DNA of 64,000 nucleotides, taken from positions 1,054,001 through 1,118,000 of the forward strand of contig JANHCV010000003.1 in the NCBI GenBank assembly GCA_025594325.1. The letters are read 5' to 3'. Under the pieces are notes generated by a model that was given only the letters and a program-made list of their open reading frames with translations, was not told the origin of the DNA and made no database searches. Below, piece by piece: positions 17,793-64,000 of the stretch (the stretch's first letter is position 1; every line of letters begins with the position of its first letter). The stretch comes from Blastocladiella emersonii ATCC 22665. Lineage: Eukaryota > Fungi > Blastocladiomycota. The position numbers and the translations under genes are program-made.

Positions 17793-18355
17793 GGTGCAAG
17801 CTTGGGTTGGTGGCGGCGGCGGCGCGTTCCGTTACGTTGCGTGGTAGGGAGGGTGCGGCCGAGAGCACAACTAGGGAGGGGAGGCGGGCGAGGCGAGTTG
17901 ACCACGGCACGGCTCGGGCGGCGCTCTCACGGCAGACAGGCAGGCAGGCACACGCGCGCCGCCCACCTCGCAAGGCGTGAGACTCGGCCCCTTGCTTCTG
18001 CGGCGATCCGCCCTCACGCGCACGTGGCCGCCGTGCCGCCCATCGCGTCCATTCCGCCCATGCCGATGCGTTCCCGGATACCCTGCATGCCCCGCGCGGG
18101 CTGAAACACGCGTGACCGTCGCGGAGCCTCCGGTCGCGCCGCACGCTTAACCGCTCCCGCCCGGCATGACGCTGTCGCCGCCGCCCATGCGTCAACCAAG
18201 GCAACCACCGTGTTGCTCTTGTTCTGAATGTTGTTGGGGACGCTACGGAACCCTCGTCCATAAAGCGGCCCGATCGCCCCGCTGCCCTCGCTCTCGCTCT
18301 CTTGAAGCGGGCTTCGAATCCTGCACCCAACGTCAACGTAACCTACGCATCAACC

Positions 18356-21300
18356 ATGCCCAACTGCTGCGCCGAGACGCACGCCATCCTCGGCATGGCC
18401 GACGCCGAAGTCGCGCTCGCCGCCGCGCTCGAGATGGCCGCGGCCCCGGCCAAGACGGCCAACAACCTTGAGGGCTTTGCCGCCGCCAATGCCGTCAAGA
18501 GCTTCGCGCCTGACATGGCCCTCGAGCCTGTGCACATGCATGTCGCCGCTGACTTTGATTTCGCCAACGCCGCGCTCGATGGCGCCGTCACGCACACGGT
18601 CTGCTGCAATGTCGTGCCCGCCGCCGCGCTTGCCGACGTCACATCGCGCCTGACGCTGCACGCCGTTGGTTTTGACAACGTGCGCGTCACCGGCGAGGGC
18701 GTCGCCGGCTTCGACTACGACGGCAAGGAGATCCACGTCCGCTGGACCGCGCCGTTTGCTGCCAAGGGCGAGGAGCGCAAGATCACCGTCACCTACCGCG
18801 TTGAGACCCCCGTCGCCGGCATGCACTTCAACGGCCCGCGCCACGGCGACCCGTCGCACGGCACCTTTGCCGTCACCGACCACGAGACAGAGCGCGCCCG
18901 CTACTGGCTGCCGTGCGTCGACCTGCCCGCGGTCCGCCCGCGCCTGAGTTTCGCGCTCACCGTGCCCGAGGCCTACCACGCCGTGGCCAACGGCGACCTC
19001 GTGTCCGAGTCGGTTGCCGACGGCCGCAAGACAGTCAACTGGGCGCTTGACTTCCCGTGCCCGAGCTACCTCCTGTGCGTCGCCGCCGGCGACTTTGTCA
19101 CCATTGACAACCGCCCCGCCAAGCTCGCCAACGGCGCCATCATCCCGATCAAGTACTACGGCACGCAGAAGATGCCCGCCGCCGACCTGTTCCGCGGCCT
19201 CGACCGCACCCCCGAGATCCTCGAGTGGCTCTCGGCCAAGCTCGACTTTCCGCTCCCCTGGGGCAAGTACTACCAGGTCGCCACGCCCTACGTACGTGTT
19301 TCTTTGCTGGGTGTTTTGCTGGGTGGCCAAGTGCTGCTTGAGACGCGTTCTTTGGCCGCCGACCTACAGCGCTCACCCCAGACCTCAAACCCCTTCACTC
19401 ACCACGAACCATTCCCACGAATTTTCTAGTCGGGCGGCGCCATGGAGAACATCTCGTTTGTGACGTGGACTGATATCGCTGCGCTCGACAAGATCCACGC
19501 GCGCGACCGCAAGTTTGCCATTGACGGCACCGACATCCACGAGGCCGTGCACACCTGGTTTGGCGACGTGACCGTAATGCGCCACTTCGAGCATGCGTGG
19601 CTCAAGGAGTCGTGGGCGACCTACATCCCGCTCGTGTTCCAGGCCGAGGGCTACTACGCCGGCCGCACCGACCCGCCCGCCACGTTCGGCCGCGACCACA
19701 GCCGCTACAACCTCTTCATGTGCCAGGAGCGGTACATTGCCGAGACTGCGCGCTACCTCCGGCCCATCGTGTGCCGCCGGTTTGATCACTCGTGGTCCAT
19801 GTTCGACGGCCACCTGTACCCCGGCGGCGCAGCGCGCATCCACATGCTGCGCGGCCTCCTCGGCGACGCCATCTTCTGGCCCGCCGTGTCTGCGTACCTG
19901 CACCGCTACTCGGGCAAGACAGTCGAGACCGACGACTTCCGCAAGGTCATGGAGGAGTTCTCGGGGCTCAACCTGACGCGCTTCTTTGACCAGTGGTTCT
20001 ACTCCAAGGGCTACCCTAAGTTCAAGGCCACCTACGCGTTCGACGCCGACAAGCACGTCGCGCACGTCACGCTCGTCCAGACCCAGGCCGACGCCGCCAA
20101 GGGCATCCCGCTGTTCGCCATGGACGTGCCCATCGAGTTCACGACCGAGGACGGCACCGTGCACCGCGCCATCGCCTCGTTTGACGGCAACAACGCCAAG
20201 GCCATCGCCGCGGTCCACACGGGCGCCAGCAGCACCAAGCCTGCGCGCGTCGAGATCGACCCCAACGGGTTCCAGCTGTTCGCCTTCGACGGCCAGTTCA
20301 ACCCGGGCCAGCCCATCCTGCTCAACGTCGCCAAGCACTCGGCCGACGTCGCCACGCGCATCCGCGCGTTCCGCACGCTGCTCAAGGACGCGGACCTGAC
20401 CACGCTGCGCAAGGTGCGCGCCGTCGCGCTCGCCGAGCCGTCGCCGTGGGTCCGCCAGGAGATTGTCGGCGCCATCAAGGGCTACCGCCACACGCCGTTT
20501 GTGCAGCTCGCGCTCGACCTGATTGACGCCGAGACCAACGACATGGCGCGCACTGCCATGCTCGGCCACGTCCACCTCACGCACACGCTGACCCTCGAGT
20601 TTGCGCGCGCCAAGCTCGCCGCCATCGCCGACCGCTCGCTCGACTGGACGTACCTGCAGGCCGGCGCCCTGCTGCGCATCCTCGCCACGCACGCGCGCGC
20701 CAAGGATTTCGCGTTCGTCGCGGATGCGGCGCTCGGCAAGGGCCTCGTTGCCAAGTTCGAGTACTACCACCTGGTCCAGGCCGACGCGGTCCGTGCGCTC
20801 GCCAAGTTCCGGTCCGAGGCCGCGGTCCGCGTCCTGCTCGACCTGCACGCGTCGTTCCACGGCGCCGAGAACCAGCACGGCCGCCTCAAGCTCGCCATGT
20901 ACGGCTCGCTGTCGGAGCTCGCCGCGTGGGTCGACCAGACGACCACGGGCGTCGTGATCGCCGAGACGCTCGCCGAGGCGCTCGTTGACCCGACGTCGCC
21001 GCTCGTGCGCAAGTGGGCGCCCAGCTTCATTGCGCGCCTCGGGTCGTCGCTCGCCGGCTCGCTCACGGCCGCCATCGAGGCCGCCATGCCGCTCAGCGCC
21101 AAGCAGGACCAGGTCCCGATCCGCCGCGTGCTCGAGAAGCTGCGCAGCGGCAAGACGGACGCGACGCCGCTCCTGTCGCCGCTCAAGGCCAAGGTCAAGT
21201 CGCTCGAAGACGCGCTCGCGTCGATCCAGTCCAAGTGGATCGAGACCCAGGTGCTCGAGGCCGAGCTGCAGAAGCGCGCCAAGCCCGCCACCGAGACCGA

Positions 21301-23544
21301 GACCGAGACCGAGTCGACGACCGTGTGGACCAACCACCTCGACGACTACGTGATCCTGCGCACGCCGGCGCAGATCAAGGCCGACACGGACAAGGTGATC
21401 CGCCTCATGACGCGCGTGTACGACGAGATCGCGTCGCTCGACCCCGCCGAGTGCACCTTCGAGTCCGTGTTCCAGCGCATGGCGCGCCTCGAGAACCGCA
21501 CCAAGGGCGAGTCGTCGGCGCTCTACTTCCTGCAGCAGGTGTCGCCCGACAAGCCGACGCGCGAGGCCAGCAACGAGGCCGCCCGCGCGCTGTCCGAGTT
21601 CGCCATCGACGCCGGCGCCCGCGTCGACCTGTACCGCGCCGCCAAGGCCGCCGTCGAGAAGCTCGGCGACCAGTCGCAGCTCGACGACGAGGACCGCCGC
21701 CTCGTCGAGAAGATTATGCAGGGGTACGAGCGCCAGGGGCTCGGCCTGCCCGACGCCAAGCGCGAGGAGCTCACGGCCATCCGCAAGCGCATTGCCGACC
21801 TCGCCCGCGATTTCGCCCGCAACAAGGCCGAGGACAAGACGTTCGTCGCCGTGACGCGCGACGAGCTCGCCGGCATGCCCGAGAGCTACATCTCGAGCCT
21901 CGCGCTCGTCGAGGAGGGCGACGCCAAGGGCTCGCTCAAGGTCACCATGTCGTACCCCGACACGCTGCCGCTGCTGCGCAAGTGCACCAACGCCGAGACG
22001 CGGCGCAAGGTCGACGTGGCGCGCATGTCGGTGTGCCCCGAGAACCAGGCGATCCTCGAGGAGATGGTCGAGCTGCGCGCGTCGGCGGCGGCGATCCTCG
22101 GGTTCAAGAACCACGCGCACTTCCGCCTCGAGCTCAACATGGCCAAGAACCCCGAGACGGTGCTCGGGTTCCTCGAGGACCTGCGCGACAAGCTGCTGCC
22201 GCACGGCCGCGTCGAGTACCAGAAGCTGCTCGACCTCAAGAACGCCGAGCGCGCCGCCGCCGGCCTCCCCGCCGAGGACGCGCTCCACTCGTGGGACACG
22301 TCGTACTACAGCAACCTGCTCGTCGAGCGCGAGTTCAACTTTGACCAGGACGAGCTCAAGCCGTACTTCTCGTACAACACGTTCCTCGCCGCCCTTCTCA
22401 AGCTGTACGAGCAGCTGTTCAACATCCGCATCGAGGAGGTGACCAAGGAGGCCGCCCTCTGGCACCCGGACGTCACGGCCTGGCGCGTGTTCGACCATAC
22501 CTCGACCTACCGCGGCGCCTTCTACCTAGACATGCATCCCCGCGAGGGAGCCTTCGGTCACGCCGCCGTTTTCGGTCTCCGCCCCGGCTGCCTGCTCTCG
22601 GACGGCACCTACCAGACGCCCCTCGTGGCAATGAAGTGTAACTTCACGAAGCCCTCCAAGGACGCGCCGTCGCTCCTGACGCACGACGAGATGGTGACGC
22701 TCGCGCACGAGGCCGGGCACATCTTCCACCACATTCTCGGCTCCCGCGTCAAGTACGGCATGTTTTCGGGCACCGCCACGGCCCGAGACTTCTCCGAGGC
22801 TCCGTACGTTCCTCGTTTTTCGAGTTTGGGCGAAATCGGTGCAGTGGGGGTTGAGAAAACTGACTCTGACGCGTCGCGATCGCGCGTACCTCGCCACCCC
22901 ACCACCCCGCCACCTCGCCACCCCGCTACCTTCACATCACGTGTAGCTCGCAGCTCCTCGAGAACTGGATCTGGGAGAAGGAGGCGCTCGTGCAGCTGTC
23001 GAGCCACTACGAGACGGGCGCCAAGGTGCCGACCGAGATCCTCGACCGCCTGATCGCGACCAAGAACGTTGGCGCCGCCATGTTCAACCTGCGCCAGCTG
23101 CGCTACGGCCTGTTCGACATGGCCGTGCACACGATCGCGCCCGGTACCAAGGCGCCCAACACCACCGAGCTGTACGACAAGATGTCGCGCGAGGTGTCGC
23201 TCATCGCGCCGCCCGCGGGCACCTGCGGCCAGTGCACCTTCTCGCACATCACCGGCGGCTACGACTCGGGTACGTTCCGTTGTTCTCGCTGCTCTGCGAC
23301 CGCCAGACTGACCTCTCGTCTCCTCGTATGACTAGGCTACTACGGCTACCTGTGGTCGCTCGTGTACGCGGCTGACATGTACTCGCGCTTCGAGGCCGAG
23401 GGCATCTTCAACTCGGGCACCGCCGCCGAGTACGTGCGCGAGGTCCTCGCGCCCGGCGGCTCGCGCGACGAGTTTGTCTCGCTGCGCAAGTTCCTTGGCC
23501 GCGAGCCCAACTCGGAGGCGTTCCTGCGCGGCATCGGCCTGTAA
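18356..23544 (+). CDS. Fusion protein: M1 aminopeptidase (with HEAT-like and coiled-coil region) + M3A thimet-like oligopeptidase
   Basis: Exons 18356-19291, 19430-22803, 22947-23269 and 23336-23544. M1 motifs: GGAMEN and HEAVH-x18-E (LKE). M3 motifs: FYLDMHPREG, TLAHEAGHIFH, RDFSEAPSQLLENW, GGYDSGYYGYLWS. No stop or intron lies between the two modules. Confidence 0.9.
21293..21310. repeat. (GAGACC)3 within the TETETETE linker between the M1 and M3 modules
   Basis: Read directly from the sequence. Confidence 0.8.
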
Positions 23545-24039
23545 GCGCGCCCGCTCGTCTGCGGCGTTCGTGGGAGCCATGTACAACAGAGTGAAGTAGT
23601 AGAATCGCAATGTATGAAGTTTTTGTCGAAATCCATGGTTCGCGAGGCCTCGAGGTGCGCGCTGAGTCGATCCTCGTTGGAACCGCTCTCCAAGCCTGAA
23701 CTGCTTGGATGGGACGTGTCGAGGCCGGCTTCATCAGCACTGATTGTGCCGAAGGACTGCTCGGCGGCCACGCTTGGGTCAGAACGTGCGCCTCAACCGC
23801 AAGTCGTGGCGCACGCGTGAATCAAACCATCATGATTAAATCGACAACTCTTACACGACGTCGTGATGCAGCTTCTGACGACATCGCTATGCTGTTCTGC
23901 GACAGCACTGATCGTAGCAAACAAGCGAATCAGTGGCTCCGTACGGGTCGCATCGCGCGCCTCAAGTGCACGTGGTGGCGCAGCGCGTCAGACGGACCGG
24001 GAACAAGGACGATAACTCTCTTGTATCTCACAGAATAAT

Positions 24040-27000
24040 TCACTGCCGCTCCGCGCGCACAACGATAGGAACGCGGACCACGAGCTTGAGCTCGGTGCCA
24101 TCGCTGGCATTCACGCGCGGCATGCGCTGCTCGACCGACCCGCCCATGCGCGCCGACATCTGCGTGAGCGCCGCGAACGTGAGAGCAACGTTGCCGAACC
24201 GCGCGCCGCGCGAGCCGAGCGACAGGTCGAGGTCCTGGTACTGCTCCGAGCCGGCACCGTTCGTGGCGGCGGACGCGTCGCCGCCATTGGACGGCGGCCG
24301 GATCGTGATGCACCCGGGCGCGACGCGGCTGATCGTCACCGAAAGGCTGACCTCGAGGCGCGTCATGGACGAGTCGCTCCGAGACGAACGCGGGTGACGC
24401 GCTGCGAGACTCGAGTCGCGCGGGGTCGCTGGCCGATTGATCGGTGGGCCCATAGGATCCTCGACAGGCACGACCATCACGAGCACGAGCCAGCGCGCGA
24501 GCGGAAGCGACGCACCGACGCCGACGGCCACCGTCTTGGCGATCACGGCGCGGAGCCCGGTGCCCGCGTCCGAGTCGAGGAACCGCGCGGCAGCCACGGA
24601 CTGCTGCGCGTCGAGACCCTCGAGCTGCATGTCGTTAAGGATCGCGAGCTGCTTGGCCTGAACCGTCGGCCGGCGCTGTTCCAGAGCGGAATCGATGATG
24701 CGGCGGAGCACCAACTCGAGTGGTTGAGCGGGACCGCCGACTCTAGGCGAAGCGAGTGCGTCAGCAGCGGGCGGAATAGCGATGCCTGCGAACCCGGCCA
24801 CGTCGTCGAGCATGGCCTTCATGTGCCGCGCCGCCTCGCTCGCGTCCGCCAGCTCGCCGACGTGACCTCGCTCCTCGAGAAGCTCTTCGGCGTTCGACAG
24901 GTCCGTGACCATGTCGCTCGCGAGGTTGGCGACGCTGCCCAGAATGAAGCCAAGCAGCCGATCGCGCGCTTGGGCCGCCTCGGTCGCGCGTCGGCCAAGC
25001 GCGGCCGCGACGCGGACGTGCTCGACCTGGTCCGAAATATCGTGGAAGAGGACGATCTGCGCAAACTCGTTGGCGACCGTGTGCCGCGACATGACCTCGT
25101 GGGCAGCAGCGGGTCCGTGTACCGTGACCACGGGCGAAACGGTCCATGGCCGTGCCGAGTCGCGCTGCTGCTGGTCGACAATCTCGCTCGCCTCGACGAT
25201 GCTGATCGAGAGCTGGACGGGAAGCGTCGAGCCGTCGCTGCGTCGTACCGTGCCCTCGCGCGTACCTGGCTCAAGCGGAAGCGATCGAGGCGGTGCGAGG
25301 GTTCTGCTGCTGTGCGACGTACTGGTGGCCGAAGAGCTCGTGACGGAAGCGACGGTACTCGAAGTCGAGCGCGAGCCCGAGCCCGAGCCCGAAGAAGTTG
25401 ATTGAGAGGACGCGGGAGAGAGGTGAAAGGGAGGAAGCTGGCCGCCGTCATCGCTCACGACGAGCAGCGCCGAGACGTGCATCTGGTTCAGCTCGGCCAT
25501 GCAGTAGCCCGTGATCTCCATGGTCGCGTCGTTGACGCCGATGATCCGGCCGTCTGAGTCGAGCAGGACCATGGCATCGGGAATCGCCTGTGTAATGGCC
25601 TTGGAATACTCCTGCAACGTCCCCAAAAGCCGTTCCTGCACGCGAAGCTGGTGCAGCGTTTGCTGCGACACGATGACACGCTTGAGGCCGCGACGCGCGA
25701 GTTCGGCCATGAGCGCAAACGACGCGAGCACCACGCCGAGGAGGACCCACGGCCAGATGGTGCGGAAGCGGGCACGGTACGGCCGCGACGGGATGCACTC
25801 GGTCGTCCACGGTGACTCGTTGACCGCGTGGAACGGAAGCACGTAGCGGTCACGGACCACGAGGTCGGCCGGGTCGGTCGGTCCGTATGTGAAGACCTTT
25901 TCCTGGCTCTGCGGGTAGACGATGCGAAGCGCGGCCTCGGTACGCGTCGGCACGCCGCGCGTGTGGTCCAAGGCTTCGGTGAAGAGGTCCTTGAGAAGCA
26001 AAGTGACCGCGGCGAACCACTTCGTGAAGGGCGTGAGAGTCGTCGCTACGGGTCGCTCGCGGACAACCAAGAACGAGATCATGCCAATCTGGTTGATGTC
26101 CACGAGAAGCACCGGCGGCGTGATTGCCCACATCCGCGTACGGTTCGTCTCGAGGACAGCCCTGCGACGTGGCGGCGATGAGAGAATGTTCATGCCGACG
26201 ATGGACGACGAGAAGCGCGCCTCTGGAAAGCTACAGTTGCGTGGCAATGAGTTGGCGCGGAATCGGACAGCCAGCGGGACACGCACATTATCGGGAGCGG
26301 AGTCGCGACTTGGTCGTCGGCCACAACGGACGAGTCATTGTTGAAGAAGTTTTTGGTGTACAGCGAGTTGTAGAGCGGGATTTGGCTCGGCGTGATGACG
26401 GGCATGACCGAGACCGAGTACACGATCGCTGGATTGAACGACGAGCGCTTGACGAAGTTGATAAAGGTGTCTGGAAGTGCAGTATCCCGGCAGTGAGAGC
26501 ATGCTTCGAGAGAATGAGAAAAGGGCGTACCGTTGGTAACCTCGCGACTCGAGTACGTGAAGGCGGCCACATTCTCAGCGTACTGCTTGAGCCGGACCTG
26601 CATCACCGTTTCCAGCGACCGGACGCTCAGCTGGCATTGGGTGTGAAAGTCACGCTGGAAGGTACGCGTCTCGACGCCGTTGAACCAGAGAAGCAGTCCA
26701 AGAGCGGCACCTGGAGGCGTTGCACAGGTTAGCAATGGTACGCGGTCCCGCATCGCAGCCGTGTCGCGTACCGACGCCGATCAGAGCAATGATGCTCCCG
26801 ACGATGAGCGGCAACCAAGTGGACGACTGGATATTGAACCGTGCGAGCATTCTCAGGACCCAGGACCCACCGGTATGCGAGTCCACACTCGCGGCCCGCG
26901 CGCGGAACGGCGGCGGCCGCTGCCACGACATGCGCATGTCGTCGTGGCTGAGAACCGCCTCGTTGGGAGCAAGTTCATGATCGATCGACGGAGGCGGAGG

Positions 27001-27318
27001 TGGTGGGTCGGGACTGATCCGCCACGTATACGCGCTGCCCTCGCCGCCGTCCATGACGGGAACTCGAGCTGGCGCAGTCCGCGGAGCAGGTATGGGAATC
27101 GCGCGCTGCACAGGTGGCGAAGCCATACGTTCGCCGGAACTCTCACTCTTGATGAACCGTGAGAGCCGAGGAGCATGTCGAGGAAGCGGCGATAGCGGTG
27201 TCGTGCGGCCGCCGCCGTCAATCAAAGGCGTGTCGCTCACTGCGCCCGGCGACGGCGCGTCGCTGACGAGCGGGTCGTACAGCCGCCGTCGCATGCCGCC
27301 AGTTGCATATTGATTCAT
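24040..27318 (-). CDS. TM-CHASE-TM-PAS sensor with degenerate histidine-kinase module
   Basis: Introns 26711-26771, 26471-26530 and 26231-26286 join three ORFs. TM1 (WLPLIVGSIIALIGVGAALGLLLWF); CHASE-like region (PIIFPE..IVGMNILSSPPRRRAVLE; TPPVLLV); TM2; PAS (AIPDAMVLLDSDGRIIGVN...RRSDGSTLPV...FHDISDQ); MGGSV remnant of the HATPase domain. The start codon is uncertain. Confidence 0.7.
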
Positions 27319-27543
27319 TGGTTTACGTGGTGCGTGGGAGATCGTGCAGTGAGCAGAGCAGCTTGCGGTCTGCGAAGGCCGAAGGGATCGCTCAAGCCAC
27401 GCCGCACGAAGCACGCTGTGGCGCAACGCGTCTTTCACTCCACCTTAGCCTGACCCCCCTTCCTCAGCAACCACGCTCGCTCGAAATACAACGGAATCAA
27501 TAAGCAATTCAAATGAGCAGATGGTCTAGCACAGTAGTCACAG

Positions 27544-30500
27544 CTACACGCCCGGGCCGTCTTGCCGCGCTAGCGTGGCCGTCTTGAGGGGCACGACCAC
27601 GTCGTGTGATGGGGAGCCCAGCTCGGCCTTGGACACGAGGATCGCCGCCGACGCCGCATTGGACGCCGCGGGCGATGCCACACCGTGCAGCGCAGCCGGC
27701 GCGCCGTTCCCGTTGGCGAGCGACCTGGAACTCTCGCCCTTGTTCAGTGGCGGCCTGGAGTCGGACAGTGCAGATGGCGGCAGCGTCTCGACCTTGGGCA
27801 CCGGTGGCGCGGCGGGGGCGGGCGTCGCTGCTGCTGCGGCAGCGGCCGCAGCGGCCTGCGCTTCTTGCATCTTCGCCTTCCAGTACACTACATGGTTTGA
27901 TGATGTGAGATTCAGCGGAAGAGAACCACGATGCGCGCGAGTCGGCGTACCCTTGTTGTTGGCAATGTTGGTCACGAGCGGCTTGATGTCGTCCTCCATG
28001 AACCTTCCCCACACGTCGAAGAGCGGCGCCACGACAAAGTCGATGAAGCCCTACGGAGACGATTCGAGCACACGCACAGTCAGTTCACGTCCGCCCCACT
28101 CGCACGATGCCCGAGACAAGCGTACCACTTGACACTTCGGGATATCCGTGTTGTACCGGTCCATGAGCGTCGAGATGTCCATGCCTCGCCGCCGCTCCTC
28201 GTCGCCTTGCCGGAAGAACTCCTCCATGATGAAGGCGGTCCACTGCGTGCAGAGGTGGAGCGGTTTCGACGGGTTGTTGATGTCGGCGCACTTCATGGCG
28301 ATCGACAGGACAAACTTGCGGTCGACGCGCTTGTCCATGTCGAACCCGAACAGCACGTTGCCCTGGATCGGCGACGGCACCGGCGCTGCTGGTGGTGGTG
28401 CGGCCGGGGATGTTGGCGACGACGACGAGGCCGCCGTCCCGTTGGCCGACGTGGTCGCCGCAGCAGCGGCCGCCGCGACGGCGGCCGGCGGGGGCGACGG
28501 GGTGCTGGCCTCGATGCGGTTCTTGAACTTGGTGATGAACTCAAAGTGCGCGGCCATGTCGGTGGCGAGGACGAGCGACACGACGATATCGCGGACGGCC
28601 TTGGACTGCTCGTTGGACATGTTGCTGAGGATGTTGAAGGACGGCGACGACCGCATGATGGCGAAGGCCATGGAGCAGTGGAAGTGCTCGAGCACCGCCT
28701 GGTCGTTGTACTGGAGCGCGAGCCGGTCGCCCGTGTTGATGAGGAACGGGTTGTTGAACCCGGGGTGCGCGAGGTCGTGGATGAGCGCAGCGATTAGCGC
28801 CGCGAACATCTCGTCGGCGGGGACGCGCCCGAGCAGCCGGTCGCGCGTCAGGTAGTAGTTCATGGACGCGGTCACGTCTGCCGCGTGCAGTGCGTTGTGG
28901 TACGGGTTGCTCGGCAGGTACCCGGCCTCGACCGCGAGCAGGAAGTTCTGCATCACGCGCGGGTCCACGTCCATGGCCATGGCCAGCCCGTGCCGCTCGA
29001 AGATGCGCATGCCCGTGAAGTAGACCGGGTGCCCATTCGACGCCTCGTTGAGCGTGATCACGTCAAAGTCGGCCGTCTCGACGAAATCGAGGCACCGCTC
29101 GATGGCCGCGATCCGGTCGGGCGGCAGCAGCGTGATATCGCGCGGCACCATGGATTCGATGTGCGGCTTGGGCGGTGCCGCCTCGATGCTGCTCTCGTCG
29201 AGGTCGGGGAGGTGCGGGAGCGCGCCGCCGTTCGGACCGCCGCCGGTACCACCGCCCGCCGCGTCCTTGCCCGTCTTGGGTGACGCGGGACCCGAACCGG
29301 TCGCGTGGCCCATGGTGCCCGGCAGGGGCGCGCCCGACGGGCTGCCGGGGCCAAAGTTGGACTTGGCCGAGACGGACCCGCGCGGTCCGGCGCCGGCAGC
29401 CGACCCGGCGCCCGTGGAGCTGGGCTCGGCGATGGCGCCGCCGCCCTTCTGCATGAGGCTGTTGAGGAAGTCGACGACGTCCGAGTCGGCGGGCTTGGTC
29501 TGGAGATCGACGCCGAACAGGTCGCCCGAGGTCAGGATCTTGATGACAAAGTCGAGCGACTGGTTCGTGTCGGCGTCGGTCTCGCCCGAGTCGCGGATCT
29601 CCTTGAGGATCTGGATGACGCGGGTGAGGGGCGCGTCGAGGTCGGCGCCGCGGTCCATCTTCATGCGCTTGAGCTCGCGCTTGAGCTCGACGTTGGTCTG
29701 CATGAGGTTGGTCACGTAGTTTTCGCGCTCGAGCAGCGTGAGGGCGTTGAGCTTGATGAACCGCTCGAGCGTCATGAAGCAGAAGATGACCACCGAGCAG
29801 GCGACGATCCACACGATCTCGCGCGGCCACGAGATGGGGTCGGTGAGGGCCTCGCCGCAGAAGAAGTCGGCGCAGTTTTGCCGGTAAAAGTACGACATGA
29901 AGGCGACGCACGACACGTAGGTGCCGAGGAACCCAATCGAGTAGCCGACGAGGTGCTTCTGCATGTTGGGGCGGCCCATCTGCAGGTAGATAATGAGGAA
30001 CGAGACGTACCACAGCGCCGTGGCAAGCATGTGGGCTTCTCGGGAGATGATGCACATGATGGCGAACGGGATCAGCGAGATGTAGAAGGGCGTGATCGAC
30101 TTGTCGTTGCGGAAGTGCGCGATCCGCGACACCTGCAGCACGTACAGCGCCGCGTTGAGGTACAGGAACATGGTGTAGTTGCGGATGTCGGCCGACAGCC
30201 CGAGCTGGTTCGCCGACATGATCAGCACCACGAACATGACGTAGTGCACCAGCAGCTGCCCAATCACCGACCCGCGGATCATGGACGTCGGCACGTGCCG
30301 CAGGATCTCCTGCGTCGCCACGCGGTGGAGCTGCATCGCGGTGCTGGAGTGGAGCGTGTCGTCGAGGTCGAAGAAGTGGCGCGACGACTGGTAGTCGAAG
30401 CTCGAGTTGTCGAACGGGTAGATGCTGACGTTGAACGTCGAATCACCTACGATGCGAGCCATAGAGGGTCAGGTCAGTACGAGCCCGACGCGTCTCGTTT

Positions 30501-47316: not shown

Positions 47317-49043
47317 TCAAATCAGCAGCACGGGCGCCATGTACCCCTCCTCGGGCTCGAGCTCGTGGTCGGGCACCTCGTCCTGCTCGTACCCAGCCCC
47401 AATGACCGGGTCGTCGCCGCGCAACCGACTGATCCGCCGCTCGTTCTCCTCGACACTCTCCTCCTCAAAGTACCCCACATGGTCCTCCTCGCTCCCGCCC
47501 ATCTCGCGCATCCGCTCCTTGCGCGCGTGGTACCCAGCGAGCGCGTGATCGACGACCGCCTTCTCGAGCCCGCGCCGCACGTGCATCGCCCGCACGTCGT
47601 CGGCCCCGTACTCGACCAGCGCCTCGCGCAGCCCGCGCTCCTCGTCGTCCGCGTACTCCTTGGGGACGACGACCAGCCCGTCGCGCGTCAACAGCACGAT
47701 CCGCAGCTGGCGCTTGCCCTGCGGGTCGTCGGTCCGCAGACCCTTGAGCAGCGACTGCGCCTGCGCGCGCGCCGACGCCTCGGACTGGCGCGCGATCGCG
47801 GCGGCGGTGTCGGCGTCGGCGCGCGGGGCGTCGAGACCGGTGTTGGCGGTGGGAGTGCCGTCGATGGCGGCGGTGCCGGCGGGCCGCGCGCCCACGTCGT
47901 ACGCCTTGACCAGCGTGTCGAGGATGTCGGTGAGCGTCGACGACAGGCCGAGCGACTTGGAGTCGCGCGCCTCGCGCAGCACGTCGGCGAGGGACATGTC
48001 TTCGGTCATGCGCTTCAGCGAGGCCGCGGGCGGTGCGGGCGGGTCGAACGCCGAGACGAACGCGGGCGGGTGCATGAGCACGGCGAGCGCGTCCTCGGCC
48101 GCACTGCCCTCGTGCGCGGCCACCGGGAGCACGTGGCACGGCACCGGGGTCGCAGCGCGGCCGGCGGCGTTGTCGTCAAAGACGCCCGTGCACATGAGCG
48201 GCGTGTACAGCGACAGGAGGTAGTTGCACACGGACGTCTCGTGGACCTGCGACATGCGCGTGACGCCGTCGGCGCTGCAGTGGTACCGGACCTCGATCGT
48301 CCGCGGCTTGCCCGTCAGGTCGCACACGGTCCCGCCGCGGTACCGCGTCGCAAGGTATTTCCGCCCGCCCGCCGACTTGACCGCGTACGCGGCCGGGTCC
48401 GCGGGCTGGGCGGTGGTTGCGGAACGCGACGCGTCCTGCTTGCCCAGAACGTACACGAGCGGCGGCTCCTTGTCGCCCATGTCGTGCGACTGCGTCACCG
48501 ACAAATCGTGGCAGTACTCGTACCGCCACCACGCCTGTACGATCGACAGGCACGGGCCGTCCCGCAGCGTCTGCAGCTGCGCCAGCGCGTGCATGATCGA
48601 CTCGCGCTCGGCCGCTGCCGCCGCCTGCTGCTTAGACGCGGCAGCGGTGCCCGTGGCGCGCGGCGCGACTGCAGCAGAAGTCCCGGTGGCGGCGGGAGCG
48701 CGCGAGATTTGCGGGCAGTAGATCTGCACGCCGTTGGGCGCGCGGTGGACGTCGAGCGGCGAGGCGTTTACGAGTTTCTACTCGTGGTTGTGAGGGAGAC
48801 TGGTCAACCGTGGCGATACTTGATGCGGTGCGGGTGCGAGCGTACCTCGCGCGGGACGGGATCGGTGGTCCACTTGATCTCGTACGACGGCGACGCAAAG
48901 AAGTCGTCGAGCGGCGATGCATCGTCGGGCAGGCCAGCGGGGTCTGCCGCCGCCGCCGCCGTGGTGACGACGAGCGTCAGGGCGGCGAGGCACGCGAGCG
49001 TGGCCAGCACGCGGCGTGGACTTGGCAGCGTGACGGTGTTCAT
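47317..49043 (-). CDS. YOS9: OS-9/Yos9-like ER lectin (MRH domain)
   Basis: Signal peptide; CL..QAWWRYEYCH; YRGGTVCDLTGKPRTIEVRYHC; ETSVCNYLLSLYTPLMC. Introns near the 5' end. Confidence 0.8.
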
Positions 49044-49320
49044 GGTTGCAGCAGGTTAGTGCCCGCTCAGGCGAGATTCATGGGTTCCGTTGAGGGAGGT
49101 GAGGGAGAACGAGCGCTGCTTGAGAGGCGGCGACAAGATCGGCGACGCCACGTCAGCCGGGCCGGCCGATGGGCGTGACGGGTCGACGCGATGCTCTTGT
49201 CAAACGTGTCTCGCACCTGATGTGTCGCGCCCTCGGTAAGCGAAGCAAGAGCGGCTCACGATCAAGACTGCTCTCGATGATAGATCGAGCAATGAATCAT
49301 GGGAGCCCGAGCACGACAAC

Positions 49321-50245
49321 ATGCAGCAACTGGATGACACCGCCACCATGACCGCACCAACGAGCGAGGAGCCGATACCCGCGGGCGAGGTTCCTGCTGA
49401 GCCGCCGGTCGCTCTGTTAGCTGATGCAGCACCAGTGACAGCCGCCGAGGTGCCCAAGAAGCGCAAGAAGCGCAAGACCGCGGCGCCGGCGGCCAAGGCC
49501 GCGCGGCCGTCGGACGTCGCAAAGGCGCGCAAGAAGAAGGTCACCGACTCGGCCACCGATGTGACGGCACCGTCCAACGGCGGATCAAAGTATGTTTGTG
49601 AGTGTACCGTGCCTAGGGGTCGACTGCTCACTCGCTGGACGTCGTAGAGCGGCCAAGGACCCTGCGAAGCGCAAGGTCAAGAAGAAGAAGAGCGGCGAGC
49701 TCGGCGCCACGAGCCGGTCCGCGTCCACGGCCTCGCTGTCGACGCCCAAGGAGCCCAAGAAACCCAAGGCGCCACTGTCCAAGTCCGCCCCGCCACCGAC
49801 GGCCAGCCAGCGCAAGCCGAGCAAGACGTCGCTCGCGAGCGCAACTCCCGCCGCCCTCCCGATCGCCACGGTCGCGGCGCTCGAGCGGTTCATGCGGCTG
49901 CGCACGCACGCTCGGGCGCTCAACGCGCTGCTGGCCGAGGACGAGCGCGCCGCGTTCCTGGCCGCGACTCGGGGCGCGCGCGGATCCGCCAGCGGCAGCA
50001 CTGAGTCCCTCGCGGCGGCACGCAGCACGACGTCGCTCCCCGCGTGTGCGTCGTCGTCGAGCAGCGTCTCGCTCCGCGGCAGTGGATCGGCGACCGCAAG
50101 GGCAGCCGAGAGTAGCGGTAGCAGCGGCGGGAGCAGCGCGACCATGACGCCGATCCTGGTGCTGTCGCTGAGCGGGTCAGGCAACGACATGTTCCCGTCC
50201 ATCTCGCAGACGAACCTGTTCAACGTGTTGTACTCGGGTGTTTGA
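49321..50245 (+). CDS. Hypothetical Lys-rich (probably nuclear) protein
   Basis: Two ORFs joined by a GTATGT..TAG intron (~49591-49647). NLS-like KKRKKRK. Confidence 0.55.
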
Positions 50246-50952
50246 TTGGGAGACAATAGAGCGCGTTCATTCACCGTGTGCGTCGTGTCCGCCCTCGCCA
50301 GTGGGAGAGGTGCGAGCGGGGAGACATGGGAGAGAGGGAGACATGCGCAGTCCTGCCGTGCGGTTCAGCTTGGCGGCGCCACACGGATGGCCCACGCGCC
50401 GACGGTCCGTGGCCCGTGGCGACGCCGCCGCCGCCGCAGCCTCCTCCCGACCGCCCTCGCCGCCTTCGAGCTCATCGGGCTCCTGCTCCGGCGCACCGCC
50501 GCCGTAACGCACCGGCAACCCACCCCACACCTTGCAACGGACCGACCTGCGTGCCGCGGAACCTGCCGCCTCGAGCCCCGGATCCCGCCCCCGCCCAACC
50601 CGGCCGCCCGCGCGCGCTGCTACGCCACCGCCGCCGCTGCTCTTCTCGCTCTCGACTTCGACTACGACTGCAACTTAGCGCATCCCCTATCTCCTCCGCC
50701 CGCCGGCCGTGCCCACCGGAAGCGCCCCTCCATCATCCAGGCGCAGCGCGCCCGCGTCTCCTGCCCGCCCGCTTCCTGATCGGACCGGCTCGATCTCCCC
50801 GCCGCCGCGAAACGTCCCCCGCCGCCCTGAGACACATACTCCACCTGCCCTCTCGAGTGTATGTCTCGCTCATATCGTCTCCCACTCCGTGATACCTCGC
50901 TTACCACTCCTCGAACGTACTGTAGAATCCGCGGAACGCCGCGGCCGCCGTC

Positions 50953-54483: not shown

Positions 54484-54487
54484 TGGT

Positions 54488-57025
54488 TCAAATAGATGGC
54501 GTGGAAGCAAAAAAGCAATACCTGCGATCATGATTTTTCATGCGCCCCATCACGCGACATGACCAACGCGACCTACTGAGGGGTAGCGCACTTGCCTTTT
54601 TGGCTCTTGGCACTGAGAAACGTGCGCGGACCGCGTCGGCCTGGACCAGGTGGTAGTACTCGAACTTGGCAACGAGGCCCTTGCCGAGCGCCGCATCTGC
54701 GACGAACGCGAAATCCTTGGCGCGCGCGTGCGTGGCGAGGATGCGCAGCAGGGCGCCGGCCTGCAGGTACGTCCAGTCGAGCGAGCGGTCGGCGATGGCG
54801 GCGAGCTTGGCGCGCGCAAACTCGAGGGTCAGCGTGTGCGTGAGGTGGACGTGGCCGAGCATGGCAGTGCGCGCCATGTCGTTGGTCTCGGCGTCAATCA
54901 GGTCGAGCGCGAGCTGCACAAACGGCGTGTGGCGGTAGCCCTTGATGGCGCCGACAATCTCCTGGCGGACCCACGGCGACGGCTCGGCGAGCGCGACGGC
55001 GCGCACCTTGCGCAGCGTGGTCAGGTCCGCGTCCTTGAGCAGCGTGCGGAACGCGCGGATGCGCGTGGCGACGTCGGCCGAGTGCTTGGCGACGTTGAGC
55101 AGGATGGGCTGGCCCGGGTTGAACTGGCCGTCGAAGGCGAACAGCTGGAACCCGTTGGGGTCGATCTCGACGCGCGCAGGCTTGGTGCTGCTGGCGCCCG
55201 TGTGGACCGCGGCGATGGCCTTGGCGTTGTTGCCGTCAAACGAGGCGATGGCGCGGTGCACGGTGCCGTCCTCGGTCGTGAACTCGATGGGCACGTCCAT
55301 GGCGAACAGCGGGATGCCCTTGGCGGCGTCGGCCTGGGTCTGGACGAGCGTGACGTGCGCGACGTGCTTGTCGGCGTCGAACGCGTAGGTGGCCTTGAAC
55401 TTAGGGTAGCCCTTGGAGTAGAACCACTGGTCAAAGAAGCGCGTCAGGTTGAGCCCCGAGAACTCCTCCATGACCTTGCGGAAGTCGTCGGTCTCGACTG
55501 TCTTGCCCGAGTAGCGGTGCAGGTACGCAGACACGGCGGGCCAGAAGATGGCGTCGCCGAGGAGGCCGCGCAGCATGTGGATGCGCGCTGCGCCGCCGGG
55601 GTACAGGTGGCCGTCGAACATGGACCACGAGTGATCAAACCGGCGGCACACGATGGGCCGGAGGTAGCGCGCAGTCTCGGCAATGTACCGCTCCTGGCAC
55701 ATGAAGAGGTTGTAGCGGCTGTGGTCGCAGCCGAACGTGGCGGGCGGGTCGGTGCGGCCGGCGTAGTAGCCCTCGGCCTGGAACACGAGCGGGATGTAGG
55801 TCGCCCACGACTCCTTGAGCCACGCATGCTCGAAGTGGCGCATTACGGTCACGTCGCCAAACCAGGTGTGCACGGCCTCGTGGATGTCGGTGCCGTCAAT
55901 GGCAAACTTGCGGTCGCGCGCGTGGATCTTGTCGAGCGCAGCGATATCAGTCCACGTCACAAACGAGATGTTCTCCATGGCGCCGCCCGACTAGAAAATT
56001 CGTGGGAATGGTTCGTGGTGAGTGAAGGGGTTTGAGGTCTGGGGTGAGCGCTGTAGGTCGGCGGCCAAAGAACGCGTCTCAAGCAGCACTTGGCCACCCA
56101 GCAAAACACCCAGCAAAGAAACACGTACGTAGGGCGTGGCGACCTGGTAGTACTTGCCCCAGGGGAGCGGAAAGTCGAGCTTGGCCGAGAGCCACTCGAG
56201 GATCTCGGGGGTGCGGTCGAGGCCGCGGAACAGGTCGGCGGCGGGCATCTTCTGCGTGCCGTAGTACTTGATCGGGATGATGGCGCCGTTGGCGAGCTTG
56301 GCGGGGCGGTTGTCAATGGTGACAAAGTCGCCGGCGGCGACGCACAGGAGGTAGCTCGGGCACGGGAAGTCAAGCGCCCAGTTGACTGTCTTGCGGCCGT
56401 CGGCAACCGACTCGGACACGAGGTCGCCGTTGGCCACGGCGTGGTAGGCCTCGGGCACGGTGAGCGCGAAACTCAGGCGCGGGCGGACCGCGGGCAGGTC
56501 GACGCACGGCAGCCAGTAGCGGGCGCGCTCTGTCTCGTGGTCGGTGACGGCAAAGGTGCCGTGCGACGGGTCGCCGTGGCGCGGGCCGTTGAAGTGCATG
56601 CCGGCGACGGGGGTCTCAACGCGGTAGGTGACGGTGATCTTGCGCTCCTCGCCCTTGGCAGCAAACGGCGCGGTCCAGCGGACGTGGATCTCCTTGCCGT
56701 CGTAGTCGAAGCCGGCGACGCCCTCGCCGGTGACGCGCACGTTGTCAAAACCAACGGCGTGCAGCGTCAGGCGCGATGTGACGTCGGCAAGCGCGGCGGC
56801 GGGCACGACATTGCAGCAGACCGTGTGCGTGACGGCGCCATCGAGCGCGGCGTTGGCGAAATCAAAGTCAGCGGCGACATGCATGTGCACAGGCTCGAGG
56901 GCCATGTCAGGCGCGAAGCTCTTGACGGCATTGGCGGCGGCAAAGCCCTCAAGGTTGTTGGCCGTCTTGGCCGGGGCCGCGGCCATCTCGAGCGCGGCGG
57001 CGAGCGCGACTTCGGCGTCGGCCAT
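54488..57025 (-). pseudogene. Truncated inverted duplicate of the M1 aminopeptidase (may be expressed as an M1-only protein)
   Basis: Same peptide as the 18356 gene from MADAEV to HLVQADAVRA, with the intron retained. The parental ATG is mutated to ATA (57062-57064). It has a new 44-aa tail and no M3 module. Confidence 0.8.
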
Positions 57026-57125
57026 GCCGAGGATGGCATGTGTCTTGGGACAGCAAATGGGTATGGTTGCAGCTGTGGTTGATGTGTAGGTCAGTGCGTT
57101 GGAAAGATTTGAAGCCTGCTTCAAG
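54627..57125 (-). repeat. ~2.5-kb inverted repeat of 18301-20793
   Basis: Direct comparison of DNA and of translations in several frames. I found only two substitutions in the core; the outer ~100 bp at the 5' end are diverged. Confidence 0.95.
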
Positions 57126-57165
57126 GGAAAGAAAGAGCAAGGGTCAGAAGGTGGGTATATTGAAA

Positions 57166-59383: not shown

Positions 59384-59728
59384 GGTGGTGGATGAGAGTG
59401 TTGAAGTGGAGTTGGTTGGATGAGAGTGAGAGTTTGTGGCGGGGCGGGCTCAAATTTATTAATGTGAGGGGGGCGGCAGGTGGGATAGGGATGGCGTGAG
59501 AAAATTCTCCGAGGCACGTGACGCCCTGAACCTGAAACACGGAGTCGCCGCGCCACCTGTCCGTCGGTGCGCCACACTTTGATCATTGTGATACTGGGCT
59601 CACTCTCCCTGTATGCGCCGACTGACCGATCTGCGACCGCTCCGCACTCCATGCAAACATAAGAATTTGAGCTCCCGCCCCTCGGGGCGGGCCCCGTCTC
59701 CCTTCCACAACATTGTTGATGAATCGCA

Positions 59729-60865: not shown

Positions 60866-60907
60866 TGGAGCCTGTATATCACACAAAATAGTCGGAGTGT
60901 TTGTTTA

Positions 60908-63781: not shown

Positions 63782-64000
63782 GGGCGTGGTCGTGGTCGGT
63801 GCGAGATCAGGGCGGAGGATGGATCGCGCGCGGCTCAGAATTCCATTGCAGTAAGCTAGGTGTCGGTGCGGGGCCGAGAAGGTGCGGCGCGGATGGGCGC
63901 GGATCAACGCGCGAGAGCGAGCGCGGTCCGCGAGGGAGGACAGGGACGAGGGCGGCGACCACGGCGGCGGTGGGCGTCGTCGACTGGTCGGCGGGTCTGC

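What the first reader, a model, noticed from the sequence alone, without database searches (positions are those of the whole stretch)
18356..23544. One polypeptide carrying an M1 aminopeptidase and an M3A oligopeptidase: a candidate peptide-recycling assembly line
The sequence shows an uninterrupted exon (19430-22803) running from GGAMEN/HEAVH-x18-E through helical repeats, a coiled coil and a TETETETE linker into a complete thimet/neurolysin-type M3A domain (HEAGH, EAPSQLLENW, GGYDSGYYGYLW). Both zinc sites look intact. Established knowledge: proteasome products are cut by thimet oligopeptidase/saccharolysin and then finished by M1 aminopeptidases, as separate proteins. Inference: the fusion channels oligopeptides from the endo- to the exopeptidase site. 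I know of no characterised M1-M3 fusion, but I could not search.
Basis: partly seen in the sequence, partly recalled or inferred. Interest (0 to 1): 0.8.

Follow-up and report, generated by a model that had tools for sequence, protein, structure and literature searches.

The report
Fused aminopeptidase–oligopeptidase gene in blastoclad fungi
A water mould-like fungus (Blastocladiella emersonii) and two relatives carry a real, conserved gene that joins a complete M1 aminopeptidase to a complete thimet-type oligopeptidase in one 1613-residue protein. It is a tidy natural hint that these two peptide-degrading enzymes work together, but it is already deposited as a "hypothetical protein" and substrate channelling is unproven.

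Summary
Window 18356-23544 (+) is a 4-exon gene. Its product is identical to GenBank KAI9184153.1 (H9P43_003206, "hypothetical protein", 1613 aa) of Blastocladiella emersonii ATCC 22665.

It joins two complete enzymes through an 18-residue spacer predicted to be disordered:
- a four-domain M1 aminopeptidase with GAMEN, HEAVH-x18-E and the catalytic Tyr;
- a thimet oligopeptidase with HEAGH…E and the Tyr loop, which aligns end to end with human TOP at E 1e-164.

Exon 2 crosses the junction with coding-type GC3 (0.84-1.00) throughout.

Collinear orthologues exist in Catenaria anguillulae (1620 aa) and Blastocladiella britannica (1631 aa). An exhaustive scan of 1.84 billion representative proteins found no other chain spanning both halves. 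Trees show that each half is a duplicate of a resident blastoclad gene. The unfused copies persist, so this was one fusion event, with no sign of horizontal transfer just before it.

The "coiled coil" is the normal C-terminal helix of the unfused M1-HEAT family.

Channelling is not shown, and a flexible tether fits proximity coupling better than a tunnel. No RNA runs were listed, so the transcript is unverified.

The scan had already noted the partial duplicate of the M1 half at 54624-57069. A second partial copy, of the M3 half, lies elsewhere on the contig.

Novelty is modest: a lineage-restricted, uncharacterised architecture.

The parts
18356..19291 (+). Exon 1 (codons 1-312): conserved N-terminal MPNCC motif, M1 N-terminal beta domain, and the start of the catalytic domain
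   Evidence: Peptidase_M1_N E 2.6e-14. The MPxCC start is conserved in the orthologues. The model equals KAI9184153.1.
19292..19429 (+). Intron 1 (GTACGT...TAG, phase 0)
   Evidence: GC is 0.55, against GC3 above 0.84 in the exons.
19430..22803 (+). Exon 2 (codons 313-1436 plus 2 nt): one uninterrupted frame from GAMEN through the M1 C-terminal domains and the spacer, and through most of the oligopeptidase
   Evidence: GC3 is 0.84-1.00 in every 150-nt bin, including the junction.
19436..19450 (+). GAMEN exopeptidase motif (residues 315-319)
   Evidence: Nearly invariant in the family alignment A2.
19538..19609 (+). M1 zinc site HEAVH-x18-E (residues 349-372)
19817..19819 (+). M1 catalytic Tyr442 (FDGHLY)
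   Evidence: (aligns with FDGISY of aminopeptidase A).
20309..21145 (+). M1 domain IV built of HEAT-like helical repeats (residues 606-884)
   Evidence: HEAT_2; helices, pLDDT about 90; full-length fold match to PepN, IRAP and ERAP1.
21167..21277 (+).
   Evidence: (present in unfused relatives from Blastocladiomycota, chytrids and Mucoromycota).
21278..21331 (+). Spacer AKPATETETETESTTVWT (residues 929-946): low complexity, variable in length between species, predicted disordered
   Evidence: 15-35 residues, not conserved; pLDDT below 50.
21332..23541 (+). Complete thimet-oligopeptidase (M3A) module, residues 947-1613, crossing introns 2 and 3
   Evidence: human TOP 1S4B residues 16-662, E 9e-165; Peptidase_M3, 436 bits; tree.
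22706..22798 (+). M3 zinc site HEAGH (1405-1409) and third ligand Glu1435
   Evidence: aligned with HEFGH...E of human TOP.
22804..22946 (+). Intron 2 (GTACGT...TAG, phase 2)
22947..23269 (+). Exon 3
   Evidence: Peptidase_M3 positions 278-386.
23270..23335 (+). Intron 3 (GTACGT...TAG, phase 1); it splits the GGYDSG|YYGYLW Tyr loop
23336..23544 (+). Exon 4 and stop codon TAA (23542-23544)
54624..57069 (-). Partial inverted duplicate of 18351-20796 (the M1 half, ending inside the HEAT domain). It is 99.55% identical, its ATG is changed to ATA, and it is annotated as the C-terminal 758 residues of the chimeric H9P43_003220 (P0004).

Best explanation
This is a genuine, lineage-restricted gene fusion in the fungus Blastocladiella emersonii (Blastocladiales).

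Origin. A duplicate of the resident fungal 'M1-HEAT' aminopeptidase gene became joined head to tail to a duplicate of the resident thimet oligopeptidase (saccharolysin-type, M3A) gene. The M1 gene kept almost its whole length, to within a few residues of its natural C-terminus and including its terminal long helix. The oligopeptidase begins within about 10 residues of its natural N-terminus.

Product. The result is one protein of about 1613 residues with two independent, apparently active zinc sites, joined by a short flexible spacer.

Most likely mechanism (inferred, not shown). The oligopeptidase module cuts short peptides, such as proteasome products, into smaller pieces. The tethered aminopeptidase module then trims these from the N-terminus. 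The fusion would give equal dosage, the same location and close proximity of two consecutive steps of peptide-to-amino-acid recycling.

Shown: gene structure, domain completeness, catalytic motifs, conservation in three species, single origin and persistence of the unfused paralogues.

Inferred: the substrates, the order of action and any kinetic benefit.
For: - Gene model. The four spliced exons give exactly GenBank KAI9184153.1, which funannotate predicted independently.
- Coding signal. GC3 is 0.84-1.00 across the whole of exon 2, including the junction. Introns and the 3' flank are at 0.55-0.61.
- Orthologues. Catenaria P0001 (54% identity) and B. britannica P0003 (48%) cover 100% of exon 2 and are collinear through the junction. 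In their own DNA the junction lies inside a single long ORF: L001 7487-9352 and L002 7562-10483.
- Motifs. Catalytic motifs of both modules are kept.
- M1 fold. AlphaFold2 gives pLDDT 89.5 and pTM 0.89. The model matches full-length PepN, IRAP and ERAP1 (TM 0.65-0.75 over about 920 columns).
- M3 module. It aligns with human TOP residues 16-662 at E 9e-165.
- Trees. The fusion M3 halves form one clade (100/100), sister to the unfused blastoclad TOPs. The fusion M1 halves form one clade (100/100), sister to unfused Catenaria/Blastocladiella M1-HEAT paralogues, with Allomyces and Sorochytrium outside.
- Unfused copies persist in B. emersonii: TOP P0282 and M1-HEAT P0005, P0006 and P0398.
- Assembly. 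It is PacBio HiFi with mean reads of 10.5 kb, longer than the gene (PMC9730499).
- Pathway background. Thimet oligopeptidase followed by aminopeptidases in the breakdown of proteasome products is what PMC8049066 and the other papers listed describe.
Against: - No transcript or protein evidence. No RNA run was listed and the annotation of this genome was made by gene-prediction programs.
- The spacer is predicted to be disordered. It could be a processing site, in which case the mature enzymes would be separate.
- A duplicated M3-only copy (P0002) is annotated elsewhere with its own upstream region, so a stand-alone M3 product is conceivable.
- The Catenaria assembly has a 1-nt frame break at the M3 Tyr loop. 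This is either a sequencing error or real decay there.
- Substrates, order of action and any benefit of tethering are untested.
Confidence: 0.72

Rival explanations
1. True substrate channelling. The two modules pack into a defined assembly, and products of the oligopeptidase site pass directly to the aminopeptidase site without equilibrating with bulk solvent.
For: - The fusion of consecutive enzymes has been conserved in three species.
- M1 domain IV and the conserved terminal helix sit next to the junction and could form an interface or a dimer.
- Heptad-like spacing of hydrophobic residues in the helix.
Against: - The spacer varies in length and sequence between species and is predicted to be disordered.
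- pTM for the HEAT+TOP construct is only 0.65 although pLDDT is 89, so the relative orientation of the modules is undefined.
- Both TOP and M1 enzymes bury their sites in their own closed clefts (established structural knowledge). No interface could be evaluated here.
Confidence: 0.12
2. A polyprotein or two-product gene. The locus is one ORF, but the cell makes two separate enzymes, either by cleavage in the exposed spacer or from an internal transcription or translation start. The fusion would then only enforce co-expression.
For: - The spacer is disordered and low in complexity.
- A near-identical M3-only duplicate is annotated as a stand-alone 775-aa gene (P0002).
- Unfused versions of both enzymes work alone in all other fungi.
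Against: - There is no drop in the coding signal and no intergenic-type sequence at the junction.
- No conserved cleavage motif appears in the spacer across the three species.
- No data on transcripts or protein.
Confidence: 0.12
3. Artefact: two neighbouring or paralogous genes wrongly joined by assembly or annotation. The two partial duplicates, whose ends at 20796 and 20993 lie only 197 bp apart, raise this possibility.
For: - Copy B (54624-57069) carries only the M1 half, and copy C (L003) carries only the M3 half plus the downstream genes.
- The assembly was purged of duplicates and polished with short reads.
Against: - The window's arrangement is the ancestral one. Catenaria and B. britannica orthologues align collinearly straight through residues 767-833, which lie between the two breakpoints.
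- The same frame and the same GC3 run throughout.
- HiFi reads are longer than the gene.
- Copy B has lost its ATG, and both copies show decayed edges, as expected of derived fragments.
Confidence: 0.03
4. One module is a non-catalytic scaffold (a pseudoenzyme) that serves only to bind or position peptides for the other module.
For: The fusion clade has somewhat longer branches than the unfused paralogues. The Catenaria copy has a frame break at the M3 Tyr loop.
Against: All zinc ligands, the general-base Glu residues, GAMEN and the catalytic Tyr residues are retained in B. emersonii and B. britannica. In Catenaria the reading frame downstream of the break is fully conserved, which favours a sequencing error.
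Confidence: 0.05

Closest known systems
Thimet oligopeptidase / saccharolysin (MEROPS M3A; human THOP1, PDB 1S4B; yeast Prd1)
   Same: Residues 947-1613 are a full-length member. The end-to-end alignment with human TOP has E 9e-165. It has HExxH plus a downstream Glu, and the GGYDxxYYGYLW loop. It nests inside the fungal TOP clade next to the unfused blastoclad TOPs.
   Different: It is covalently attached behind a 946-residue aminopeptidase. It is a paralogue (51-53% identity) of the canonical unfused TOP, which the same genome still has (P0282).
Four-domain M1 aminopeptidases (E. coli PepN, ERAP1, IRAP, aminopeptidase A, tricorn-interacting factor F3)
   Same: GAMEN, HExxH-x18-E and the catalytic Tyr are present. 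The predicted four-domain fold matches over about 920 columns at TM 0.65-0.75.
   Different: Sequence identity to any solved structure is only about 16%. It belongs to a separate 'M1 + HEAT_2' subfamily that is widespread in bacteria, archaea and early-diverging fungi. The fungal members have an N-terminal MPxCC motif and a long C-terminal helix. No member of this subfamily appears to be characterised.
Orthologous fusion proteins ORZ35026.1 / UniProt A0A1Y2HKE5 (Catenaria anguillulae) and KAI9221559.1 (Blastocladiella britannica)
   Same: Same architecture, collinear over the full length at 48-56% identity, and the same N-terminal motif.
   Different: Their spacers are longer and alanine-rich rather than TETETE. 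They are annotated only as hypothetical protein or 'Peptidase M3A/M3B catalytic domain-containing protein', and none has been studied.
Other proteins with several peptidase modules, e.g. the 7248-aa Elusimicrobiota protein P0116 with four tandem M3 modules, and two-domain ACE
   Same: More than one zinc-peptidase active site in one chain.
   Different: Those repeat the same family. Here two different families, an endopeptidase and an exopeptidase, are combined.

Membership tests
MEROPS M1 aminopeptidases (gluzincins) | GXMEN exopeptidase motif | tested here: met
   GAMEN at residues 315-319. Nearly invariant in the 43-sequence family alignment.
MEROPS M1 aminopeptidases (gluzincins) | HEXXH-X18-E zinc-binding and catalytic motif | tested here: met
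   HEAVHTWFGDVTVMRHFEHAWLKE at 349-372. Also present in both orthologues.
MEROPS M1 aminopeptidases (gluzincins) | Transition-state-stabilising Tyr about 85 residues after HEXXH | tested here: met
   Tyr442 in FDGHLY aligns with FDGISY of aminopeptidase A. Nearly invariant in A2.
MEROPS M1 aminopeptidases (gluzincins) | Profile matches above the curated cut-off, and the four-domain fold | tested here: met
   Peptidase_M1_N at 50.8 bits (cut-off 25.8) and Peptidase_M1 at 111.5 bits (cut-off 27.7). The AlphaFold2 model has pTM 0.89. Foldseek gives E about 1e-35 to PepN, IRAP and ERAP1 over the whole length. The fold is predicted, not solved.
MEROPS M1 aminopeptidases (gluzincins) | Aminopeptidase activity | not testable with these tools
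   Needs an enzyme assay.
MEROPS M3A (thimet oligopeptidase / neurolysin / saccharolysin) | HEXXH with the third zinc ligand Glu about 25 residues downstream | tested here: met
   HEAGH at 1405-1409 and Glu1435 in FSEAPSQLLENW. They align with HEFGH...VEAPSQMLENW of human TOP.
MEROPS M3A (thimet oligopeptidase / neurolysin / saccharolysin) | Full-length two-lobe enzyme, including the N-terminal helical part and the flexible Tyr loop | tested here: met
   Aligned with 1S4B residues 16-662 of 674 at E 9e-165. GGYDSGYYGYLW is at 1540-1551. The AlphaFold2 model has pLDDT above 90 over this module.
MEROPS M3A (thimet oligopeptidase / neurolysin / saccharolysin) | Phylogenetic placement with TOP/saccharolysin, not with OpdA, Dcp or the mitochondrial intermediate peptidase | tested here: met
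   PDB scores are 553 bits for TOP and 489 for neurolysin, against 269 for oligopeptidase A and 225 for Dcp. It nests within the fungal TOP clade.
Substrate-channelling bifunctional enzymes | A defined inter-domain interface or tunnel linking the two active sites | tested here: inconclusive
   The spacer is predicted to be disordered and the orientation of the modules is undefined (pTM 0.65). The full 1613-aa chain exceeds the folding limit, and no inter-domain error estimate is available.
Substrate-channelling bifunctional enzymes | Kinetic evidence of direct transfer of the intermediate | not testable with these tools
   Needs biochemistry.

The most novel reading that the evidence does not exclude
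The fusion is a dedicated peptide-to-amino-acid disposal machine. It would dimerise through the conserved terminal helix of the M1 module. It would possibly be held at a membrane by S-acylation of the conserved N-terminal Cys-Cys. The oligopeptidase would hand its products to the aminopeptidase with a measurable kinetic advantage. If so, the fusion also predicts that the uncharacterised fungal M1-HEAT aminopeptidase is the physiological partner of thimet oligopeptidase/saccharolysin in other early-diverging fungi.
Probability: 0.2. Interest if true: 0.55.

Novelty: new variant of a known kind. Interest (0 to 1): 0.4.

Why it matters
Gene fusions of this "Rosetta stone" type are among the more reliable natural clues that two proteins act in one pathway. 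Here the fusion links thimet oligopeptidase, the main enzyme that shortens proteasome products, to a widespread but uncharacterised M1-HEAT aminopeptidase subfamily. This gives a testable hypothesis for that subfamily's role.

It also offers a natural two-site endo/exo-peptidase for testing whether tethering speeds up complete peptide hydrolysis. That question is of some interest for protein-hydrolysate enzymology.

The significance is limited. The architecture is confined to one small fungal order, both parts are ordinary members of known families, and the proteins are already in public databases.

Tried and rejected
1. RNA evidence. The look-up of sequencing runs listed no RNA run for 18300-23600, so read laying could not be used.
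2. I first read P0004 (1100 aa) and P0002 (775 aa) as a split annotation of this locus. This was wrong. tblastn and blastn showed that they are encoded by two partial duplicates elsewhere. The locus itself is annotated as one 1613-aa gene.
3. A misassembly at the duplicate breakpoints was considered and rejected, because the orthologues are collinear through that region.
4. The M1-HEAT family follows the fungal phylogeny, with bacterial sequences as outgroup, and the fusion half is sister to resident paralogues.
5. My first impression was that the M3 half looked bacterial, because one search listed mostly metagenomic M3 hits. This was an artefact of the word search. Searches place it with fungal and animal TOPs.
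6. The ESM Atlas search gave only M1-HEAT clusters and no M1+M3 cluster.
7. Literature searches for an M1-M3 fusion found nothing relevant.
8. Genome contigs and metagenome contigs were not scanned, because genome contigs holds only bacteria and archaea.
9. The whole 1613-aa chain could not be folded (limit 1200 aa), so two overlapping constructs were folded instead.


Full report
**What is there**

The window is about 68% G+C. It is identical to contig JANHCV010000003.1 of the Blastocladiella emersonii ATCC 22665 assembly GCA_025594325.1 (L004 matches window 48573-64000 at 100%).

Window 19430-22801 translates without a stop into 1124 residues. These run from SGGAMEN and HEAVH-x18-E, through helical repeats and the TETETETE tract, to HEAGH and FSEAP.

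Three short introns have GTACGT donors and TAG acceptors: 19292-19429, 22804-22946 and 23270-23335. Splicing them out joins exon 1 (18356-19291) and restores EAP|SQLLENW and GGYDSG|YYGYLW. The coding sequence is 4842 nt and ends at TAA 23542-23544.

The resulting 1613-residue protein is letter-for-letter GenBank KAI9184153.1, locus tag H9P43_003206, "hypothetical protein". The genome's own annotation pipeline therefore called the same single gene independently.

**Domain content**

| Pfam family | Residues | Score |
|---|---|---|
| Peptidase_M1_N | 58-239 | above gathering score |
| Peptidase_M1 | 282-501 | above gathering score |
| Peptidase_M3 | 1161-1612 | 436 bits, above gathering score |
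| HEAT_2 | 608-688 | just under its cut-off |

The catalytic motifs are complete:
- GAMEN at 315
- HEAVH-x18-E at 349-372
- Tyr442 in FDGHLY
- HEAGH at 1405 with Glu1435
- the Tyr loop GGYDSGYYGYLW at 1540

The M1 part (residues 1-935) was folded with a 43-sequence alignment and gave pLDDT 89.5 and pTM 0.89. The model shows the classical four M1 domains: an N-terminal beta domain, the thermolysin-like catalytic domain, a beta sandwich (509-588) and a helical domain IV (606-884). A single long helix (894-934) follows.

Foldseek matches the whole model to E. coli PepN, IRAP, ERAP1 and ERAP2 and aminopeptidase A. E-values are about 1e-35 and TM-scores 0.65-0.75 over about 920 columns, at only about 16% identity. 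The "helical repeats" are therefore simply M1 domain IV.

The M3 part (residues 940-1613) aligns with human thimet oligopeptidase 1S4B residues 16-662 of 674 at E 9e-165. The match is weaker for neurolysin (E 1e-145) and far weaker for oligopeptidase A or Dcp. It is a complete TOP-type enzyme.

**Is the junction real?**

Four lines of evidence say yes.

1. Third-position G+C is 0.84-1.00 in every 150-nt bin of exon 2, including the bins over the junction (0.98-1.00). The introns and the 3' flank have 0.55-0.61 G+C. No intergenic-type sequence lies between the halves.
2. Two other species have the same protein: Catenaria anguillulae ORZ35026.1 (1620 aa, 54% identity) and Blastocladiella britannica KAI9221559.1 (1631 aa, 48%). 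Each covers 100% of exon 2, carries the same three Pfam domains and is collinear through the junction.
3. In their genomic DNA the junction lies inside one long ORF: L001 7487-9352 and L002 7562-10483.
4. The assembly is PacBio HiFi with a mean read length of 10.5 kb, twice the length of the gene (PMC9730499).

No RNA run was listed for this stretch, so transcript evidence is missing.

**How the two parts are joined**

I aligned the unfused relatives of each half.

The "coiled coil" (residues about 892-928, consensus L-x-x-R-V-E-x-L-E-K...K-W) is the normal C-terminal helix of the unfused M1-HEAT proteins. It occurs in Blastocladiomycota, chytrids and Mucoromycota, where a short charged tail and the stop codon follow it.

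In the fusion the tail is replaced by a spacer of 15-35 residues. The spacer differs in length and sequence between the three species. After it, the oligopeptidase starts within about 10 residues of its usual N-terminus.

AlphaFold2 on residues 560-1613 gives high confidence for domain IV, the long helix and the TOP module. For residues 929-946 it gives pLDDT below 50 and no secondary structure. The overall pTM is only 0.65, which means the relative orientation of the modules is undefined.

This is an end-to-end fusion of two whole enzymes through a flexible tether.

**Origin and distribution**

An exhaustive phmmer scan of exon 2 against 1.84 billion representative proteins returned only one entry matching across residues 1-1124. 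That entry is the cluster represented by Catenaria P0001.

Among all proteins fetched, only the three blastoclad fusions hit both halves, apart from P0002, the truncated M3-half duplicate described below. A 7248-aa Elusimicrobiota protein has four M3 modules but no M1 module.

*The M3 tree.* The fusion halves form one clade (100/100). It is sister to the unfused TOPs of Allomyces, Catenaria and B. emersonii, inside Blastocladiomycota, with Sorochytrium and Paraphysoderma outside.

*The M1 tree.* The fusion halves form one clade (100/100). It is sister to the unfused M1-HEAT paralogues of Catenaria and Blastocladiella. Allomyces, then Sorochytrium, then the other early-diverging fungi lie outside, and the bacterial sequences are the outgroup.

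Both halves are therefore duplicates of resident genes, and the fusion arose once, near the common ancestor of Catenaria and Blastocladiella.

The two trees disagree slightly on timing. In the M3 tree the duplication appears to precede the split from Allomyces, but that node is unstarred (92/95).

B. emersonii still has an unfused TOP (P0282, 668 aa) and unfused M1-HEAT genes (P0005, and the neighbouring pair P0398/P0006). The fusion is thus an extra, specialised copy.

**Partial duplicates and the misassembly question**

Copy B. Window 18351-20796 recurs inverted at 57069-54624 with 99.55% identity. Its ATG is changed to ATA. Eight of its eleven differences cluster in the first 30 nt, and the upstream flank is decayed, mostly by C-to-T and G-to-A changes. 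It is annotated as residues 343-1100 of a chimeric protein, H9P43_003220 (P0004).

Copy C. Window 20993-28473, which holds the M3 half, the CHASE-sensor gene and part of the phosphodiesterase gene, recurs about 130 kb away on the same contig at 98.97% identity (L003). It is annotated as a 775-aa "metalloendopeptidase" (P0002). Its differences are concentrated at the two edges, and the central 6 kb shows only about 3 changes.

The two fragments end 197 bp apart inside the HEAT domain. I therefore tested whether the window's gene could be a chimeric join.

It is not. The orthologues align straight through residues 767-833, which lie between the two breakpoints. The full-length arrangement is therefore the ancestral one and the fragments are derived.

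I cannot explain why the two fragment ends nearly coincide, nor whether the near-identical cores reflect gene conversion or short-read polishing.

**Function**

Both modules look catalytically competent.

Established knowledge: thimet oligopeptidase shortens peptides of roughly 6-17 residues released by proteasomes, and aminopeptidases then finish them. This is the pathway cited in the papers, for example PMC8049066.

The most economical reading is that the fusion tethers two consecutive steps of cytosolic peptide recycling. This would give equal dosage, a shared location and proximity.

The flexible, non-conserved spacer argues against a fixed tunnel.

Cleavage in the spacer, or an internal start giving two products, cannot be excluded without RNA or protein data.

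**Comparison and novelty**

Each half is an ordinary member of a known family.

The M1 half belongs to a little-studied "M1 + HEAT_2" subfamily that is common in bacteria, archaea and early-diverging fungi.

The combination of M1 and M3 in one chain was found only in these three blastoclad proteins. All three are deposited as hypothetical or uncharacterised proteins. I found no paper describing the architecture, although the paper library is not complete.

I rate it a new variant of a known kind. It is of moderate interest as a Rosetta-stone link between TOP and the M1-HEAT aminopeptidases.

Noticed in passing
window 54624-57069 (-), with the gene model 54632-59383 (-): An inverted 2.4-kb duplicate of the M1 half (18351-20796), 99.55% identical. 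Its start codon is changed to ATA. Eight of its 11 differences lie in the first 30 nt, and its upstream edge is decayed mostly by C-to-T and G-to-A changes. It is annotated as the C-terminal 758 residues of a chimeric 1100-aa protein (H9P43_003220), whose first 342 residues have no Pfam match.
   Followed up: partly
L003 6493-13965 (contig JANHCV010000003.1, about 1208625-1216097), matching window 20993-28473: A 7.5-kb dispersed duplicate carrying the M3 half, the CHASE-sensor gene and a truncated phosphodiesterase gene. Its upstream neighbours differ (histone H2A). It is annotated as a stand-alone 775-aa 'metalloendopeptidase', KAI9184208.1. Its differences sit at the two edges (19 in the first 500 nt, 58 in the last 1 kb), while the central 6 kb has about 3.
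   Followed up: partly
window 20796 and 20993: The end of the M1-half duplicate and the start of the M3-half duplicate lie only 197 bp apart, both inside the HEAT domain. This suggests that one older full-length duplicate was later broken by a rearrangement. I could not reconstruct the event.
   Followed up: no
window 18356-18373; N-termini of P0001, P0003, P0005, P0007, P0009-P0014, P0016, P0018, P0019, P0022-P0024: Fungal M1-HEAT proteins, fused or not, start with a conserved Met-Pro-(1-3 residues)-Cys-x0-1-Cys motif (MPNCC, MPHLCC, MPCHC, MPHCC...). The bacterial homologues lack it. It resembles N-terminal dual-cysteine S-acylation signals, so the family may be attached to membranes. It also supports ATG 18356 as the true start.
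   Followed up: partly
L001 10974-10996 (Catenaria anguillulae MCFL01000024.1): The Catenaria orthologue has a 1-nt frame break just before the GGYDSSYYSYLW Tyr loop. The deposited model skips the loop with a tiny intron. The downstream frame is fully conserved, so a homopolymer sequencing error is more likely than real decay.
   Followed up: partly
P0116 / HOW28112.1 (Elusimicrobiota MAG, 7248 aa): A giant bacterial protein with four tandem thimet-like M3 modules (about residues 2935-5801), named 'Mpv17/PMP22 family protein' by its source.
   Followed up: no
P0398 and P0006 (H9P43_009169 and H9P43_009170): Two unfused M1-HEAT paralogues of B. emersonii are neighbouring genes on another contig, and a third (H9P43_002914, P0005) is on this contig. 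The family has expanded locally.
   Followed up: no
window 18356-23544 versus L001 and L002 flanks: The genes next to the fusion gene differ in all three species: CCT6 and a CHASE sensor here, PHD and B-box genes in Catenaria, and a DEAD helicase and an MFS gene in B. britannica. Synteny does not help to date the fusion.
   Followed up: no
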